A stretch of DNA of 63,647 nt, counting the filler, from Polymyxa betae A26-41 (lineage: Eukaryota > Protista > Endomyxa: Phytomyxea): NCBI GenBank assembly GCA_003693705.1. It is 6 parts of 6 records of this genome, joined end to end, with 100 filler letters (N's around TTAATTAATTAA, not from the genome) between each part and the next. Parts side by side here need not be neighbours in the genome. Positions count along the whole stretch, not along the records: positions 36,455 to 55,584 come from RBZT01000702.1; 5 more parts are not named here. One strand, given 5' to 3'. Of the stretch, positions 42,790 to 49,803 are shown one piece after another. A model generated the notes under the pieces. The model had not been told where the DNA came from. It saw only the letters and a list, made by a program, of their open reading frames with translations, and made no database searches. Numbering within the stretch: position 1 is the first letter of the stretch; each line of letters begins with the position of its first letter. A program made the translations under genes and the position numbers.

Positions 42790-45474
42790 TTATGAAACGG
42801 TAGGTACGGCATCACAAACGCGTCGCACCTTCTGCAGGAGCTCCGCCATCTGCCCGCGGTACCGCCGGATGAGATCCGGTACGGATCCGGCTGCGACGCC
42901 GCTGTCGTTCTCTGATGATAGTAAATCCTGGGCGTGAATATCGAAGACATCGTGAGAGGCCTCCAGGAGGCTGCGCACCCGGTTCGGGCCCAGGTCGCGC
43001 AGCAGCCTCTCCGGCACTGGACAAGCCCCAACAAACGCGTGAACCTGAGGATAGTGTAAGAAAGCCGAAACCCTAAAACCCTAAACCCTAACAATCTCAA
43101 GATCCTGGCAGCTGATGTCGACACAGTCATGATCAGCGAACGCCACGGATGCCGCCAGATCCAGCTCCAGGACTTCGAACGGGTTCGCGTCCACCACCTG
43201 ACCGTACTGGACCAGCAATTCGGCGTTCGTGAGGGCGCGGCCTCGGGTGACAGTCACGAGCTCGCCGGCCTGAATATCGGCTCGGGCGACCAATAGGAGC
43301 TCATCGGAATGCTCGATGAAGGCCGCGTTCGGAGTGCAGGAGTGCGCAGGTAACGCAGGTAACGTCAGCGGCAAGGCGGAGGTCCCGTCCGTTAACGTAA
43401 CCAGGTGCGATTGGACGGTCGACAGAGCGCGTAGGAAGTCTGGGAATTCCACCTGGAGTCCGTCACGGACTTGTTCGTAGACAGACGCGGCCTCCGCCAG
43501 CCGTTCATGTGTGAGTGCCACAGCAGGAACGTGCTCCGAACCCAAAAGGCCAATCTCGTTCTCGGACCAGAGTAACGTTGAGTTCGGTGTCAGTAACGTG
43601 GCCGACTGTGTCGACTGTAACAGGTACAGAGCCAGAGAGTATTCCGGAGCAGAATCGCCGTCGCTGAGGTTGCACGTTACAAGATCAGTGTAGGAGATGC
43701 GGGCGATCACGTCGCCGGCCTGTAACGCACGTTTCGTGACGATGCCGTCGGACGCGGTGAACTGCAGCTGCTGTAACAGGAACTCGGCGGAGTCCGTGAC
43801 GGAATGAACAGGTCCCAGAAGGCGTTCCAGAGCAGCGATACTATCAGTCAGGATATCGTGCTGGCCCTGGACGTAATTGCGGACGTCCTCTTGATGGCCT
43901 ACAGGATTAACGTTACTGACCGACGCAGTGGTGACAGTGGATTATGTTACCAATCGACGACATTTCCGTGTTATGCCTGTCCTCATCGTTACCTAAAATG
44001 CAGTGTCAGATGGCTTGAGTATGATGCTACATACCCGGTGAATCCGGAAGTTACGTTACATGGCAGCCGATCTCGCGCATGACGCATTAACGTGAGCAGT
44101 GTCTCATAGACAGCTTGTTGGATCTCGGTATTAAGGAACGTCTCCGGTTGGTAACGTAATGGTAACGTATAGGCCTCGATCGGTGTCATTAAACTGATCG
44201 ATGTCGCCTGTAGCAGTGTCTCCGGTAACGGGCTGCGTCTCTGCAAGAAGTGAGACGTGGGCAGGTCACGCAGCAGCCGCAGCTGTAACTCTGCGTGCGG
44301 ATCATCCGGCTGCGGCTGAGAGAGTTTCAGCGTAACGTGATCATGGGGGTTACCCGGTAACGTGAACCCATAACCCATCAGGAACTCCTCATTCTGAAAC
44401 GTATTGTCAGACGCGCGCCGGGAATTGTAAAACAGCGGTAACGTAATAGGTAACATGGTAACGAGAACGCACCGATTTCGCGCCGTAATTCGTGAAGATC
44501 TGCTGGCCGGCGCGGACACGAAACCCCGACTGGCGCAGTCCGCGGAACTGTACGGATTCGGCGGTCACGTGCCAGTTCTGGACCGTACTGGCCCCGCCCA
44601 GCTGATGGTTGAAATAGTCGGCGACGGGCAGCAGGCAGCCGACGCCCTCGCTGGCGTCGTCGTCGAGGCCGGCCAGACGGGCCGGGAACCCGCGCGAGCT
44701 CAGCACGGAGTAGGCCCAGCGCAGATGCGTGGGCGTGCACCATTCGGGCTGCATTAAACCCCGGGAGCATAAAGCCGTACTGAACCGCTCCAGATCACGA
44801 TTTATCGATTCCAATCTGCGTTAAAACATTCAAACGAAAATTGCGTGCAGATTTTTGAGAAAAAAATGTGAAATTTCGGAAAAAAGTTGAATTTGTGAGA
44901 CCTATCGGTGACGGCGGCGAACATGTTGGTGCCTTTAAGGGCAGAGTAGTCGGGCCACCAGGGTGGGTCCGTGAAGGACTCCGGCAGCGCTTGCAGATAC
45001 GGGCCGAAGTACGACCCGGCCGTGAACTTTTCATAGATCAGCCAGAAATGGAAGATCGTCTTGGGTGACGCTCCCAGCTCGGACAGAACCGGCGCGATCT
45101 TCAGACTCAATAAGGCAACGTTACATACCGTAACATAAGACAAACATTATTCGTGAGAAAAACAAAAGGGATTTAATGATTGAAACTTAACAGTGAATTC
45201 TGAAATATGAGATCGTGAAAAATTGAAATGTTTTTAGAAAATGTAAAAAAATCTTTAGTGTAATTACGGTTGATTGGCGAGCTCGCTGCATAGTGAGCGC
45301 GAGATGGAAAGGAATCTCCAGGACGACCTGGTCATCCTGCAGGTCCCGGGCAGCGAACAGACCGCAGCCTTGGCCCGGGACGTACTGGACCCGCACATGG
45401 TCGGGGACGTTCAGGCCGTTCTGACAAGCCCAGGCCAGAACCTGATCCGACGGGGACGACGACATGGCCGTCAT
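42790..45474 (-). CDS. SET-domain lysine methyltransferase (Rubisco LSMT/SETD3/SETD6-like) with a second, degenerate SET domain; multi-exon
   Basis: GQGCGLFAARDL, SYFGPYLQALP, WAYSVLSSRGF, LLPVADYFNH, GQQIFTNYGAKS-NEEFLMGYGF; second repeat GIVTKRALQAGDVI...HSCTPNA...ARADIQAGELV...NAELLVQYG. Confidence 0.92.
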
Positions 45475-47091: not shown

Positions 47092-49803
47092 TTAAACGGG
47101 GAGTTTATGCAGATCATCGCCAAAGAGGAGGTCGAGGGCGCCAAGCAGAGGGGGCAGTACGCCCACGCGATCCAGCCGAATCTTCATCAGGTCGAAGGCG
47201 ACGCAGGTGGTCTCGCCCATGCTGGAATCGGCCGTACACGGCACCTTCGGATAGCGCTGCGAGAAGTGCGTCAGGATCGTCTCGCGGGCTTGCATGTCCC
47301 GACCCACTTGTAACGCCTCTCTACAACATCGTAACGTAAACAAAAAATGACAGGCAAACCACAGTTTCGCAAACGTTGAAGGTTACACAGACAAGTGAAT
47401 TGTGAGAATTGTGAAAATTAGGGTTTTAGGGTTTCAACCTACCTTGTGGTGGAATGTTTCTTCAGAACAGCTTCCTCTTCGAGCTCATCCTCAAAAGTCG
47501 CCTGAAAACTCGAATCAGAAAACGACAACTTATGTTACGAAGCCGGGTTGCACTTGTAACGTGACCACAGCACACGTTACCTCGTGGATGAGAACAGTGG
47601 CGCCCAGACCGGCTTGAACCAGCGCTGGGCATGGGCGAGTATCACCGGAGTAGACGATCTTGAAGGAAGGCGATTCGATGACGATGCCGTAGGATTCGTT
47701 ACAGTGCGCCACGGGGACCGATTCGAAACGGGTCAGGCCGAGCGACCTACGGACCCAGTCCTGGACATGGCCATTCGGGTCCGTGTTATGCACCAGACGG
47801 CAACGTAATCGGTCGCAGCCGTGGGCAGCGAAAGTCCGCACCCAGTCGAGGACTCGGGTCGGTCCGACGACGACCAGATCGGTGTCCGCCGCTGCAGTAA
47901 CCGAAGTCCGCGCGCGAATCAGGTTCAGCAACCCGACCTGCGACATCACCGTGTTAACGTTACAGCTAACTTTGAATTGGAAACGTAATGAAAGCGAATC
48001 ACAACACCACGAACGGTGAACGAATTGTAAACTGGTAACGTGATCAGGAAACGTAAACCGAATACGACACAAGAAAAAGATGAATTCAATATGGAGACAA
48101 AATGGGTAACGAAAAGGCCATGGCGTCGGTAACGTTGAATAATGATGTTACATGGTGGTCGGCATGCTTATGTGAGATCCAGATCAGTTTCAGAGCGCGT
48201 AGATACGAGGTGAAGGCCGCGCCGGGTCCATAGACCCGTTGCAGCTGGCCAAGGACGCCCTCGCCGCAGTCCAGCAGGACGTGCGACCCACACGCCGGTA
48301 ACGTTAGGTCAATACCGCTCGAGTTGCGGTACTTGGAAGGGGCCGCCGCCCCGGTCCCAAGAAACAGCAGCTCCGGACATAGCGGGTTCGAGGACGCAAT
48401 AGCCCGCTGCCGGTCACGCAATGCCTCGATCATTGGTAACATGACCTCAATCGACTGCACATGATCGCAAATCTACCACATGTAACGTAAGCATTCAATG
48501 GTAACGTAATCACACAGATGATACGCGGTCGAAATCGAGAGCTGGCGGGAGATGCGAGAGATCCAGTCCCGGAGTTTTATGCGGCCGAAACACGTAACGT
48601 GTCATGGGCAGGGCTGCGCCGTCCGCCACGCCGTCCGCCACGGGACACGCCGGGAACGACTCCGGACAGATCCAGTGCATGGCCGTCTGTTGAACTGCGG
48701 ACGATCGGAACGTGGCCGCGCTCAGGTGCGCGGCCTCGTCCCCAAACAGATGTGTCACATCCGGATCGAACGCGGCCTCCATCCATGCGCGATATTCCGC
48801 TGCCTGCGCCAGGTGCCGCGGCGCCAGGTGCAGGGCCAGTACGGCGTCGCGGCCGAACTGGGCCTCGGGGCGCAGCGCGTCCAGGTACGCAAGCGACGGA
48901 CATTCGACGACGACGAAGACGGCGCCGGGACGTGCCGGCCCCACGACCTGGTCGGGCTCGATGCGGCGTCCGTCGGGGAGCGTGATGGCATGGCCCGCCA
49001 CGAGACGTGCGCAGTCCGGGCCGCGTGGGACGCCCAGTTCGCGGGCTCGCGCGGCGTCGAACTTGCCGGGAGTGTCGGCTAGCCGGACCGCGTAACACAC
49101 GGCAAGATCGTCGTCGCCGTTACCGTTCGTGACAGTGTCCAGCAACTCGAGCTCGGACTGCGCCGGGAGCGCGTCCTCCCGCGAACGTTTGCTGGGGCAG
49201 CACGACGGGGGCGCGGCCCGCAGCACCACGGCATCGACGGTGATCTGATCGTCTTTGAAGACGTTGGACGACGTCTGTAGAAGTTCCTGCTCCTGTAACA
49301 AGAGCATCAGCGAGTGAGGCGCGTAACGTTATCAGTCGCGTACTTGTAACGTGATCGTGGGATGAGCCGCAAATCCGCGCGTGGCCTGGACGACGGCCCC
49401 TAGGCCGGCGGGTCCGTGGACGCGGATCGTATCGATGGTCGAAGGGGCCGCGGCCCCAGTCCCTGTTGCGTTCGGGTCGGGATCGGAGTTCTGCCCGGAC
49501 AAGACCTCGGCCAGTGTTAGGAACAGGCCCGGGACGCCGCCGTACTGGCCGATCCCGAGCCGGGTCAGGAAAATGTCGCCAAGACGGACGAGACGCACTT
49601 TATTGGCCATGCAGAAGCGCTATACAAAAATCGGAAACGTAATCAGTGGATCGGATCGAGTTGGAACGTGAACGGGAGGCCGCGCGGCCCCGACGGACCT
49701 GGACGCCCTCGCCGCAGTTGAACAGGTAACGTTTCGTTTCGGTCACGAGGTACAGACTGGGCGGGGACCCGGGGGCTGCGCCCACCACCTCCACGTGAAC
49801 CAT
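47092..49803 (-). CDS. ELAC2: tRNase Z long form (ELAC2/Trz1), multi-exon
   Basis: YLFNCGEGVQ, GKFD...LGVPRGP exosite, FLGTGAAAPSKYRN, LLDCGEG, SHKHADHH, YSGDTRP, IHE-AT, LTHFSQRYPK. Confidence 0.97.

What the first reader, a model, noticed from the sequence alone, without database searches (positions are those of the whole stretch)
43300..49750. Highly iterated GTAACG/CGTTAC motif (palindromic consensus GTAACGTTAC) saturating two housekeeping gene bodies
Seen: by hand I count about 36 copies of GTAACG or CGTTAC in these 6.4 kb (e.g. 43350, 43359, 43572, 43593, 44151, 44162, 44438, 44458, 47310, 47331, 48129, 48298, 48482, 48501, 49323, 49346, 49726), against about 3 expected for a random 6-mer on two strands. 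They lie in introns and in exons, where they are often spelled by ACG-TTA (Thr-Leu) despite GC-rich codon usage. Extensions fit GTAACGTTAC or (GTAAC)n, and the motif looks rare in the surrounding TEs. Established: cyanobacterial HIP1 is an iterated palindrome overlaid on coding sequence; GYAAC is an RFX half-site and YAACKG is the Myb core. Inference: a DNA-level code marking active host genes, for example a protein-binding, nucleosome-positioning or anti-silencing signal in TE-rich chromatin, or a methylation/repair-maintained HIP1 analogue centred on CpG.
Basis: partly seen in the sequence, partly recalled or inferred. Interest (0 to 1): 0.85.

Follow-up and report, generated by a model that had tools for sequence, protein, structure and literature searches.

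The report
Strand-specific short word saturating two genes
Two neighbouring genes of an unidentified protist carry a 9-10 base word about 10 to 100 times more often than chance, in introns and written into exons by codon choice. It lies almost only on the transcribed sense strand and is the exact complement of a 5' splice-site word these genes use, so it is a real, undescribed signal whose function is still open.

Summary
There are exactly 36 copies (27 GTAACG and 9 CGTTAC on the + strand) in 43300-49750, against about 3 expected. No dinucleotide shuffle comes close.

- Both genes lie on the minus strand: a SET-domain gene (42790-45474) and a tRNase Z/ELAC2-like gene (47092-49803).
- Read on the sense strand, the element is the asymmetric word T-Y-A-C-G-T-T-A-C-M, not the palindrome GTAACGTTAC, which has 0 exact copies.
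- The 10-mer occurs 11 times against 0.09 expected, 10 of them on the sense strand. The one antisense copy is a real 5' splice site.
- Nine of 11 introns carry the word or a one-mismatch variant (about 9 per kb).
- Exons carry 15 six-mer copies, filling 15 of the 42 places where the protein allows it (2.6 expected). This survives synonymous-codon shuffles.
- 19 of 23 TTA codons sit in this context.

The flanks show only a weak excess. No transposon domains and no CpG depletion were found there.

My best reading (0.4) is a signal on the sense pre-mRNA linked to 5' splice-site or intron recognition. Antisense-decoy, DNA-binding and mutational readings remain open.

The parts
42790..45474 (-). 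SET-domain protein gene. Six exons in my model: 45474-45268, 45098-44902, 44815-44473, 44393-44060, 43898-43093, 43044-42790. It translates to 713 aa.
   Evidence: The open spliced frame was built and translated only inside scripts. Exon 5 matches Pfam SET PF00856 at 27.1 bits (cut-off 22.4, E 5.9e-6), and exon 1 gives a faint SET N-terminal hit. The intron 1 and intron 4 boundaries rest on GT-AG and reading phase only.
47092..49803 (-). tRNase Z long form (ELAC2-like) gene. Seven exons: 49803-49699, 49619-49344, 49292-48516, 48472-48152, 47937-47581, 47501-47443, 47320-47092. It translates to 707 aa.
   Evidence: tblastn of the Spongospora subterranea ribonuclease Z (P0002) covers every exon. 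Pfam Lactamase_B_2 hits fall on exons 4 and 5. The frame is open.
43350..43364 (-). Two sense copies (43350, 43359), 9 nt apart, in SET exon 5. They spell T-L-P-A-L-P just upstream of the HSCxPN-like SET motif.
43572..43598 (-). Two sense copies (43572, 43593), 21 nt apart, in SET exon 5. Both are ACG-TTA-CTx (T-L-L).
43722..43727 (-). One sense copy in SET exon 5 (GCG-TTA-CAG).
44151..44167 (-). Two sense copies (44151, 44162), 11 nt apart, in SET exon 4. One is in the ACG-TTA-CCA frame and one in the CGT-TAC frame.
44225..44230 (-). One sense copy in SET exon 4 (CCG-TTA-CCG).
44332..44362 (-). Two sense copies (44332, 44357) in SET exon 4. The second lies in a 13-nt palindrome, GTTACC-C-GGTAAC, at 44349-44361.
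44438..44463 (-). Three copies 8-12 nt apart (44438, the GTTAC core at 44450-44454, 44458), within the first 35 nt of SET intron 3 (44472-44394).
45676..45681 (-). One sense copy (a full 10-mer) 202 nt upstream of the SET ATG, possibly in the 5' UTR.
47011..47016 (-). One sense copy 76 nt downstream of the ELAC stop codon, probably in the 3' UTR.
47310..47336 (-). A pair flanking the 3' splice site of ELAC intron 6: 47331 is in the intron, ending 8 nt before the terminal AG, and 47310 is in exon 7 (GCG-TTA-CAA).
47556..47580 (-). ELAC intron 5. The 5' splice site GTAACGTG (47580-47573) is the reverse form of the word, and a sense copy follows at 47556. Together they form an 8-bp hairpin with a 9-nt loop.
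47938..48151 (-). ELAC intron 4 (214 nt). It holds sense copies at 48129, 48106 and 48035, two ACGTTTC variants, and a palindromic copy at 47954-47963. Its 5' splice site is GTAACA, and the intron ends are predicted to pair.
48298..48303 (-). One sense copy in ELAC exon 4. It spells T-L-P where Spongospora has L-I-P, with no insertion.
48482..48506 (-). Two full 10-mers, 19 nt apart, filling the 43-nt ELAC intron 3 (48515-48473).
48594..48599 (-). One sense copy in ELAC exon 3, spelled CGT-TAC (R-Y).
49323..49351 (-). A pair flanking the 5' splice site of ELAC intron 2: 49346 is in exon 2, ending 2 nt before the junction, and 49323 is in the intron (the 7-mer ACGTTAC starts at intron position 15).
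49726..49731 (-). One sense copy in ELAC exon 1. It spells the conserved R-Y of the RYLFN motif as CGT-TAC.
44054..44059 (+). Reverse form (sense GTAACG) used as the 5' splice site of SET intron 4. The full 10-mer on the + strand is at 44051-44060.
43899..43992 (+). Two further reverse-form copies inside SET intron 4: 43987 in mid-intron and 43911 near the 3' end. The copy at 43911 overlaps the palindromic TAACGTTA at 43908-43915.
45119..45124 (+). One reverse-form copy in the 3' part of SET intron 1.
43675..43680 (+). One reverse-form copy in SET exon 5 (GTA-ACG, V-T).
47697..47702 (+). One reverse-form copy in ELAC exon 5 (C-N-E).
49118..49123 (+). One reverse-form copy in ELAC exon 3 (G-N-G).

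Best explanation
The element is a strand-specific word on the sense pre-mRNA, U-Y-A-C-G-U-U-A-C-M.

Shown:
- It is packed into introns, and written into exons wherever the protein tolerates it, by choosing CGT-TAC for Arg-Tyr and xCG-TTA-Cxx for Thr/Ala/Pro-Leu-Pro/Gln/Leu.
- It is the exact Watson-Crick complement of K|GUAACGURA, and two of the eleven introns here use that word as their real 5' splice site.
- It also resembles the canonical U1 snRNA 5' end (recalled as AUACUUACC) with one extra G.

Inferred: the word works at the RNA level in 5' splice-site or intron recognition, in genes whose splice sites are otherwise weak and varied. It could recruit a sequence-specific factor, as an intronic or exonic splicing enhancer does. 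It could instead pair with 5'-splice-site-type sequence.

The strand bias, the intron concentration, the codon-level overlay and the complementarity to used 5' splice sites are shown. The RNA-level action and the factor are inferred.
For: Strand specificity:
- The 10-mer has 11 exact copies against 0.09 expected, 10 on the gene-sense strand.
- The 9-mer is 17 sense to 3 antisense inside the genes.

Intron concentration:
- The six-mer is at 8.8 per kb in introns and 3.5 per kb in exons.
- Intron dinucleotide shuffles give 10 observed against 0.88.
- Nine of 11 introns carry the word or a one-mismatch variant. In 6 of them the first copy starts 9-30 nt from the 5' splice site.

Exon overlay:
- Synonymous-codon shuffles give 5 against 0.90 (P = 0.0008) and 10 against 1.89 (P < 0.0002).
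- 15 of 42 synonymous opportunities are realised against 2.6 expected.
- In ELAC all five exonic copies align to Spongospora residues without insertions.

Binding-site-like gradation: one-mismatch variants are enriched, 26 against 8.6, while positions G-T-T are invariant.

Link to the 5' splice site:
- The 5' splice sites of ELAC intron 5 and SET intron 4 are GTAACGT, and that of ELAC intron 4 is GTAACA.
- The only antisense 10-mer is the SET intron 4 splice site.
- The canonical GTAAG is absent from the sense strand, 0 against 2.1 expected.
- The base before the reverse word (G, then T) mirrors the -1 base of the real 5' splice sites.

Confinement to the transcription units: there are 2 copies in the 1.6 kb between the genes, both within about 200 nt of a coding end.
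Against: - There are only two genes, both on the same strand, so bias relative to transcription cannot be separated from bias relative to the chromosome.
- No RNA data exist.
- At the 5-6-mer level the reverse form is also enriched in introns: 6 against 0.44, or 4 when the two splice sites are left out.
- In exons the reverse form is realised at 3 of 17 opportunities against 0.83 expected. Part of the exon orientation bias is therefore coding opportunity (42 places against 17).
- Ten of the 15 exonic copies lie far from any splice site, in SET exons 4-5.
- Sequence identical to a U1-like 5' end inside a pre-mRNA would be expected to mask 5' splice sites rather than help them.
- Intron folds are no more stable than shuffles, with z from -1.1 to +1.9.
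- The flanks keep a weak excess with the same polarity.
Confidence: 0.4

Rival explanations
1. Antisense-strand signal. The functional form is K|GUAACGURA on antisense transcripts: a run of strong 5'-splice-site words, each also holding tandem GUAA units. These would mark antisense RNA across host genes for U1-dependent nuclear retention and decay, or for Nrd1/Seb1-type early termination, so that double-stranded RNA does not form over the genes.
For: The reverse complement of the full word is a real 5' splice site in two introns, and it shares their G/T preference at -1. GGTAACGT is the top 8-mer on the antisense strand, 10 against 0.23. The lower exon density is explained by coding limits, since 36% of allowed places are filled. 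The flanks keep a weak excess with the same polarity. The precedents are from my own knowledge, not tested here: 5'-splice-site motifs cause nuclear retention of unspliced RNA, and Nrd1/Nab3 motifs are enriched antisense to yeast genes.
Against: Selection on antisense transcripts is usually weak, yet here amino acids and a third of all synonymous opportunities are bent to the word. The last 560 nt of the SET gene, where antisense transcripts would most likely start, has no copy. The canonical 5' splice-site words GTAAGT and GGTAAG are not enriched on the antisense strand, 0 against about 1. In the mammalian U1-PAS logic, U1 sites lengthen transcripts rather than stop them.
Confidence: 0.15
2. 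DNA-level binding site. A sequence-specific DNA-binding protein (winged-helix RFX-like, reading the half-site GTTACC/GGTAAC, or Myb-like or another type) binds double-stranded copies throughout gene bodies as a chromatin or anti-silencing mark. The exon strand bias would arise because the reverse form would create a TAA stop codon or a cryptic 5' splice site.
For: Both orientations are enriched in introns at the six-mer level, 10 and 6 against 0.9 and 0.4. Sixteen of 37 copies read GTTACC, an RFX half-site (consensus GTNRCC N0-3 RGYAAC, from memory). There is one perfect inverted pair, GTTACC-C-GGTAAC, at 44349-44361. Adjacent copies cluster at about 10 and about 21 nt, with 11 gaps of 26 nt or less against 5.5 expected, P = 0.007. 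Other DNA-type elements (telomere-like boxes) also sit in these introns. Coding opportunity favours the sense form 42 to 17.
Against: At full length the word is asymmetric and 10 to 1 strand-biased, also in introns where no coding limit applies: 9 sense to 3, and 2 of those 3 are palindromic overlaps. The best-conserved bases, A-C-G upstream of GTTAC, lie outside the RFX half-site. Inverted pairs of the X-box type are the exception. There are no copies in the promoter-proximal regions apart from one, and the spacing of clusters shows no nucleosome-like regularity.
Confidence: 0.2
3. Mutational or templated origin. A transcription-linked repair or conversion process writes the word (or short patches that hold it) into transcribed DNA, a eukaryotic analogue of a repair-maintained iterated word such as HIP1, with little or no function.
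For: Between the two copies of the 0.85-kb inverted repeat, one copy has CGTTAC (Arg-Tyr) where the other has CTCTGC (Leu-Cys). That is three changes within five bases in an otherwise locally identical stretch, which looks like one multi-base event. Amino acids are altered to fit the word: T-L-P recurs four times in the two proteins.
Against: Near-cognate words are enriched rather than depleted. The word shows graded, position-specific tolerance like a binding site. It is concentrated in introns and next to splice sites. The repeat example is a single case, in a patch that has two more differences just beside it.
Confidence: 0.1
4. Remnants of a mobile element. The introns would descend from an introner- or MITE-like family whose terminal or subterminal repeats carry the word, like the short transposase-binding repeats of hAT or CACTA elements.
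For: The ends of ELAC intron 4 are complementary over about 18 predicted base pairs, including AACGTTAC against GTAACGTT plus an adjacent ACATCA match. The ends of SET intron 4 also pair. Several copies lie in both orientations within 214 nt.
Against: The introns share no similarity beyond 8-13 nt word-level matches. Fifteen copies sit in exons on conserved residues without insertions. Short introns of 43-79 nt carry only direct copies.
Confidence: 0.05

Closest known systems
HIP1, the highly iterated palindrome GCGATCGC of cyanobacteria
   Same: A short word, far above chance, is laid over protein-coding sequence through codon and amino-acid choice.
   Different: HIP1 is a perfect palindrome, strand-symmetric, genome-wide and prokaryotic. 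This word is asymmetric (the exact palindrome has 0 copies), 10 to 1 strand-biased, concentrated in transcribed DNA and especially introns, and its one-mismatch variants are enriched.
Intronic and exonic splicing enhancers, such as G-triplets just downstream of weak 5' splice sites in short introns and purine-rich exonic enhancers
   Same: It is strand-specific, dense in short introns and often 9-30 nt from the 5' splice site. It also occurs in exons, where it constrains synonymous sites. The splice sites around it are weak and varied.
   Different: Known enhancers are degenerate 3-6-mers. This is a defined 9-10-mer that is also the exact complement of a 5' splice-site word in use. No factor is known. 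Many exonic copies are far from junctions.
DSR elements of fission yeast: clusters of the hexamer UNAAAC bound by the YTH protein Mmi1
   Same: Multiple sense-strand copies of one short word lie inside the coding regions and introns of particular genes and are read on the RNA.
   Different: DSRs mark meiotic mRNAs for destruction. Here the carriers are ordinary enzyme genes, the sequence is unrelated, and the function is untested.
U1 snRNA 5' end and 5' splice-site pairing, including bulged registers, U1 telescripting and nuclear retention by unspliced 5' splice-site motifs
   Same: The reverse complement of the word is used as a 5' splice site twice. The word itself resembles the canonical U1 5' end with one extra G (a comparison from memory).
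   Different: The excess is of the U1-like strand in the sense RNA, which puts splice-site-like words on the antisense RNA. That is the opposite of the sense-strand U1-site enrichment described in mammals. The U1 gene of this organism was not available.
RFX X-box (GTNRCC N0-3 RGYAAC)
   Same: GTTACC/GGTAAC is an X-box half-site and is present in 16 of 37 copies. One perfect inverted pair lies at 44349-44361.
   Different: Copies are mostly single or in direct repeat. The strongest conservation (A-C-G 5' of GTTAC) lies outside the X-box. There is a strong strand bias. The sites are in gene bodies rather than promoters.
PATC (periodic An/Tn clusters) in introns of C. elegans germline genes
   Same: A non-coding sequence feature of gene bodies that distinguishes host genes lying in repressive surroundings.
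   Different: PATCs are a 10-bp-periodic composition signal acting on DNA and chromatin, found in introns only. This is a discrete oriented word that is also placed in exons.

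Membership tests
HIP1-type iterated palindrome | The word is a perfect palindrome | tested here: not met
   GTAACGTTAC has 0 exact copies. 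In the TnACGTnA table the right half is fixed as GTTA, the left half varies, and the mirror forms are 0-1.
HIP1-type iterated palindrome | Equal abundance on both strands and throughout the genome, intergenic DNA included | tested here: not met
   The 10-mer is 10 to 1 by strand. The genes hold 26 + 9 copies, against 9 + 4 in 13.7 kb of flank. Only 19 kb could be examined.
HIP1-type iterated palindrome | Overlay on coding sequence beyond what the amino-acid sequence explains | tested here: met
   Synonymous-codon shuffles give P = 0.0008 and P < 0.0002. 15 of 42 opportunities are realised against 2.6 expected.
Branch-point sequence | One copy per intron at a fixed short distance upstream of the 3' AG | tested here: not met
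   Copies start anywhere from position 9 to position 192 of an intron, and there are up to six in one intron. Two introns have none. CTRAY-like candidates lie nearer the 3' ends.
Intronic/exonic splicing enhancer | Strand-specific enrichment in or next to introns | tested here: met
   8.8 per kb in introns against 3.5 per kb in exons. Nine of 11 introns carry it. In 6 introns the first copy lies 9-30 nt from the 5' splice site.
Intronic/exonic splicing enhancer | Removing the element changes splicing, and a trans-acting factor binds it | not testable with these tools
RFX X-box | Two half-sites GTNRCC and RGYAAC in inverted orientation, 0-3 nt apart | tested here: not met
   Only one such pair exists (44349-44361) among 52 five-mer cores. 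Distances between copies of mixed orientation are 8, 10, 17, 18, 20 ... nt.
RFX X-box | An RFX DNA-binding-domain protein is encoded by the organism | not testable with these tools
   No other sequence of this organism could be fetched.
Myb-binding site (YAACKG) | The core YAAC followed by G/T and then G | tested here: not met
   The word reads TAACGT. The sixth base is T in 20 of 27 copies, and only 49118 reads TAACGG.
Introner / MITE-derived introns | The introns are copies of one repeat family with shared sequence beyond the termini | tested here: not met
   In an all-against-all intron comparison, the only matches are 8-13 nt word-level hits and the telomere-like 18-mer.
5' splice site of this organism | The reverse form of the word sits exactly at exon-intron junctions supported by homology or reading phase | tested here: met
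   ELAC intron 5 is GAG|GTAACGTG, with the junction fixed by the alignment to Spongospora. SET intron 4 is CAT|GTAACGTA, with the junction fixed by phase only. ELAC intron 4 is CAT|GTAACA.

The most novel reading that the evidence does not exclude
This protist lineage has an altered 5' splice-site and U1 pairing word (GUAACGU rather than GUAAGU). It also uses the complementary 10-base word as a genome-wide, strand-specific 'host transcript' code. The code is written into introns, and by codon choice into exons, of ordinary genes. It lets the nucleus tell proper sense transcripts from antisense or foreign ones.
Probability: 0.15. Interest if true: 0.85.

Novelty: new variant of a known kind. 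Interest (0 to 1): 0.62.

Why it matters
If the pattern holds across the genome, it would be a rare eukaryotic case of a discrete oriented word that shapes codon usage and even amino-acid sequence: most TTA codons and recurrent Thr-Leu-Pro here owe their presence to it. Because the word is tied to the splice-site vocabulary, it would give a direct handle on how introns are recognised when splice sites are weak. It would also hint at a non-canonical U1 pairing register in a poorly studied lineage. On the practical side, gene finders and codon-usage models for such genomes would need to know about it.

Tried and rejected

Attempts to get more of this genome or close relatives all failed:
- The search for homologous proteins on the SET exon 5 ORF and on a flank ORF found nothing.
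- The look-up of encoding contigs returned no DNA for P0001 and P0005 and no record for the window ORF.
- Two metagenome scans found nothing.
- The one fetched contig (L001/L002, an unrelated intron-less eukaryote-like ELAC locus) has no excess of the word. It serves only as a crude negative control.

Seven literature searches found no description of this word. The Plasmodiophora and Lemnamoeba genome papers do not mention it.

Ideas rejected:
- Branch-point signal: positions vary, introns hold multiple copies, and CTRAY candidates lie elsewhere.
- Introner family: the introns share only word-level matches.
- Stable RNA structure as the selected feature: z-scores are not significant.
- Nucleosome-like regular spacing: none seen.
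- Methylation-decay contrast between genes and flanks: CpG observed/expected is about 1 in the flanks.
- Myb core: the sixth base is wrong.
- Poly(A) signal on the sense strand: there is no GTAAC in the ELAC 3' UTR.

Limits of what was done:
It needs the whole genome.
- Spliced gene models were joined only inside scripts, for translation and codon shuffling.

Full report
**Observation**

The piece 36455-55584 is 19,130 bases with 47.8% G+C. In 43300-49750 there are 27 GTAACG and 9 CGTTAC on the + strand. With 1000 dinucleotide-preserving shuffles per gene, GTAACG is 12 against a mean of 0.84 (max 4) and 14 against 1.05 (max 5). GTAACGT is 8 against 0.19 and 11 against 0.21. An unbiased k-mer ranking of the region puts this family at the top at every length from 5 to 8. 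For example, GTAACGT is 20 against 1.0 and GGTAACGT is 10 against 0.23 under an order-2 model.

**What the genes are**

Both genes lie on the minus strand.

The right-hand gene is a long-form tRNase Z (ELAC2-like):
- An exhaustive profile search with its largest exon found as best named relative the ribonuclease Z of Spongospora subterranea (P0002, 48% identity). Nothing closer than 49% turned up. The source is therefore probably an unsampled relative of phytomyxean or endomyxan Rhizaria. This placement rests on one protein.
- tblastn of P0002 covers seven exons.
- The model 49803-49699, 49619-49344, 49292-48516, 48472-48152, 47937-47581, 47501-47443, 47320-47092 gives an open 707-aa frame.

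The left-hand gene encodes a SET-domain protein:
- Exon 5 matches Pfam SET at 27.1 bits, above the cut-off.
- A six-exon model, 45474-42790, gives an open 713-aa frame.
- Its intron 1 and intron 4 boundaries rest on GT-AG and reading phase only.

The joined models were used only inside scripts. All searches were made exon by exon.

**Anatomy of the word**

Read on the sense strand, the 37 GTTAC cores give the consensus T(22/37) Y(28/37) A(23/37) C(27/37) G T T A C M(27/37).
- The 10-mer TYACGTTACM has 11 exact copies against 0.09 expected, 10 of them on the sense strand.
- In the TnACGTnA table the right half is fixed (GTTA), the left half varies (T, C or A), and the mirror forms are absent. 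The word is truly asymmetric.
- One-mismatch variants are also enriched, 26 against 8.6, mostly at the outer positions, while G-T-T never varies. This is the graded pattern of a binding site, not of an exact word maintained by repair.

**Where the copies lie**

With the models (4266 nt of exon, 1131 nt of intron), the counts are:

| Six-mer on the sense strand | Exons | Introns | Near gene ends |
|---|---|---|---|
| CGTTAC (sense form) | 15 (3.5 per kb) | 10 (8.8 per kb) | 2 |
| GTAACG (reverse form) | 3 | 6 | 0 |

- Intron shuffles give 10 against 0.88 for the sense form and 6 against 0.44 for the reverse form.
- Nine of 11 introns hold the word or a one-mismatch variant. In six of them the first copy starts 9-30 nt from the 5' splice site.
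- Adjacent sense copies cluster: 11 gaps of 26 nt or less against 5.5 expected, P = 0.007, with distances bunching near 10 and 21 nt.

**Exon overlay**

- Shuffling synonymous codons within each gene leaves 0.90 and 1.89 copies, against 5 and 10 observed (P = 0.0008 and P < 0.0002).
- Of the 42 places where the protein sequence permits CGTTAC, 15 carry it, against 2.6 expected from codon usage. That is 3 of 5 Arg-Tyr and 11 of 24 [S/P/T/A]-Leu-[L/P/H/Q/R].
- Nineteen of the 23 TTA codons are followed by C, and 12 are preceded by CG.
- In ELAC all five exonic copies align with Spongospora residues without insertions, for example R-Y of RYLFN and A-L of EALxVGR. There the word is created by codon choice on conserved positions.
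- In the poorly conserved SET C-terminal half it also shapes amino acids (T-L-P in three places).

A dicodon-preserving version needs the whole genome.

**Strand and the splice-site link**

- Inside the genes the 9-mer T[TCA]ACGTTA[CA] is 17 sense to 3 antisense. Two of the three are palindromic overlaps and the third is the 5' splice site of SET intron 4.
- The reverse complement of the word, K|GTAACGTRA, is a real 5' splice site twice: ELAC intron 5 (GAG|GTAACGTG, junction fixed by homology) and SET intron 4 (CAT|GTAACGTA). ELAC intron 4 starts GTAACA.
- The canonical GTAAG is absent from the sense strand, 0 against 2.1 expected, and no intron uses it. Fifteen of the 16 sense GTAA are followed by C.
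- Three more introns have CG at +4/+5 (GTCCGT, GTGCGT, GTACGC).
- The base preceding the reverse word (G 16, T 11, C 7, A 3) parallels the -1 base of the eleven real splice sites (G 5, T 4).
- From memory, the canonical U1 5' end is AUACUUACC. The sense word equals it with one extra G. I could not check this organism's U1, and the Rfam scan of the piece found no snRNA.
- In ELAC intron 5 the splice site and a sense copy form an 8-bp hairpin. The ends of ELAC intron 4 and of SET intron 4 are predicted to pair. Overall fold energies do not beat shuffles, however, so I do not lean on structure.

**Surroundings**

- No flank ORF matches a transposon domain, and two flank or exon ORFs have no detectable homologs.
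- CpG observed/expected is about 1.0 in the flanks and 1.2-1.3 in the genes. Nothing suggests methylation-driven decay or RIP.
- The flanks keep a weak excess of the same polarity: GTAACG 9 against 1.5 and CGTTAC 4 against 1.5. Two of these copies are within about 200 nt of a coding end, and others lie in minus-strand ORFs.
- Every candidate gene in the piece except one repeat copy is on the minus strand. Polarity relative to transcription therefore cannot be separated from polarity relative to the chromosome.

**Interpretation**

The strand specificity at full length, the intron concentration, the confinement to the transcription units, the binding-site-like gradation and the exact complementarity to a splice-site word in use make a pre-mRNA-level, splicing-related signal the best reading (0.4). 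Whether it acts by recruiting a protein or by pairing with splice-site-type sequence is unknown.

The mirror reading, splice-site-like decoys on antisense RNA, fits the same facts less economically (0.15).

A DNA-binding reading (0.2) is kept alive by three things: the enrichment of both orientations in introns at six-mer level, the RFX-half-site likeness with one perfect inverted pair, and the clustering at about 10 and 21 nt. It is weakened by the 10 to 1 bias and the asymmetry.

A writing or drive process (0.1) has one suggestive case: in the inverted repeat, CGTTAC in one copy faces CTCTGC in the other, three changes within five bases.

An introner origin (0.05) is contradicted by the lack of shared sequence among introns and by the exonic copies on conserved residues.

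**What could not be done**

Nothing genome-wide could be tested, there are no RNA reads, and there are no orthologous DNA sequences. All attempts to fetch more of this organism failed. Seven literature searches found no prior description.

**Verdict**

This is a real, very strong, strand-specific word with a clear tie to splice-site vocabulary and to codon usage. Its function is unproven, and it has been seen in only two genes. Interest is 0.62. I class it as a new variant of a known kind (a cis-acting processing signal), with a 0.15 chance of being something larger.

Noticed in passing
43067-43084, 47418-47435, 49995-50014: An identical 18-mer of telomere-like repeats (mixed TTTAGGG and TTTTAGGG units) occurs three times: inside SET intron 5, inside ELAC intron 6 in the opposite orientation, and about 190 nt upstream of the ELAC ATG. 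It resembles the plant telo-box, is orientation-independent, and so is probably a DNA-level element.
   Followed up: partly
39379-40227 and 51766-52614: A G+C-rich (57-59%) inverted repeat of about 0.85 kb, 88% identical, brackets both genes 11.5 kb apart. Each copy carries an ORF for a hydrophobic protein with no Pfam match, and indels break the frame between the copies. It could be a duplicated gene family or the ends of a large composite element.
   Followed up: partly
52236-52241 versus about 39771-39776: At homologous positions the right repeat copy reads CGTTAC (Arg-Tyr) and the left copy reads CTCTGC (Leu-Cys). That is three differences within five bases, in a stretch that is identical for about 50-60 nt upstream. 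It is a possible one-step gain or loss of the word.
   Followed up: no
42790-49803 (both strands): The usual eukaryotic 5' splice-site word GTAAGT is absent from both strands, and GTAAG is absent from the sense strand (0 against 2.1 expected). None of the 11 introns starts with GTAAG, and six have CG within +4 to +6. This suggests an unusual U1 pairing register.
   Followed up: partly
49811-49826: A run of 14 G on the + strand (C on the gene's sense strand) lies in a G-rich stretch starting 8 nt upstream of the ELAC start codon.
   Followed up: no
53931-54719 and 54784-55329 (minus strand): Two adjacent AT-rich ORFs (262 and 181 aa) share a 39-residue segment (E 9e-6). They have no Pfam match, and the 262-aa ORF found no database homologs. 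They may be a lineage-specific tandem pair with codon usage unlike the two G+C-rich genes.
   Followed up: partly
41342-41614 (minus strand): A 90-aa ATG ORF with a plausible helical protein sequence carries one sense copy of the word, again as GCG-TTA-CTG. Another copy lies about 200 nt upstream, at 41816.
   Followed up: no
43093-43898: The SET gene seems to encode two SET-like regions: an LSMT/SETD-like one in exons 1-4, recognised only faintly, and a full Pfam SET domain in exon 5. It could be a fusion or two adjacent genes merged in my model.
   Followed up: no
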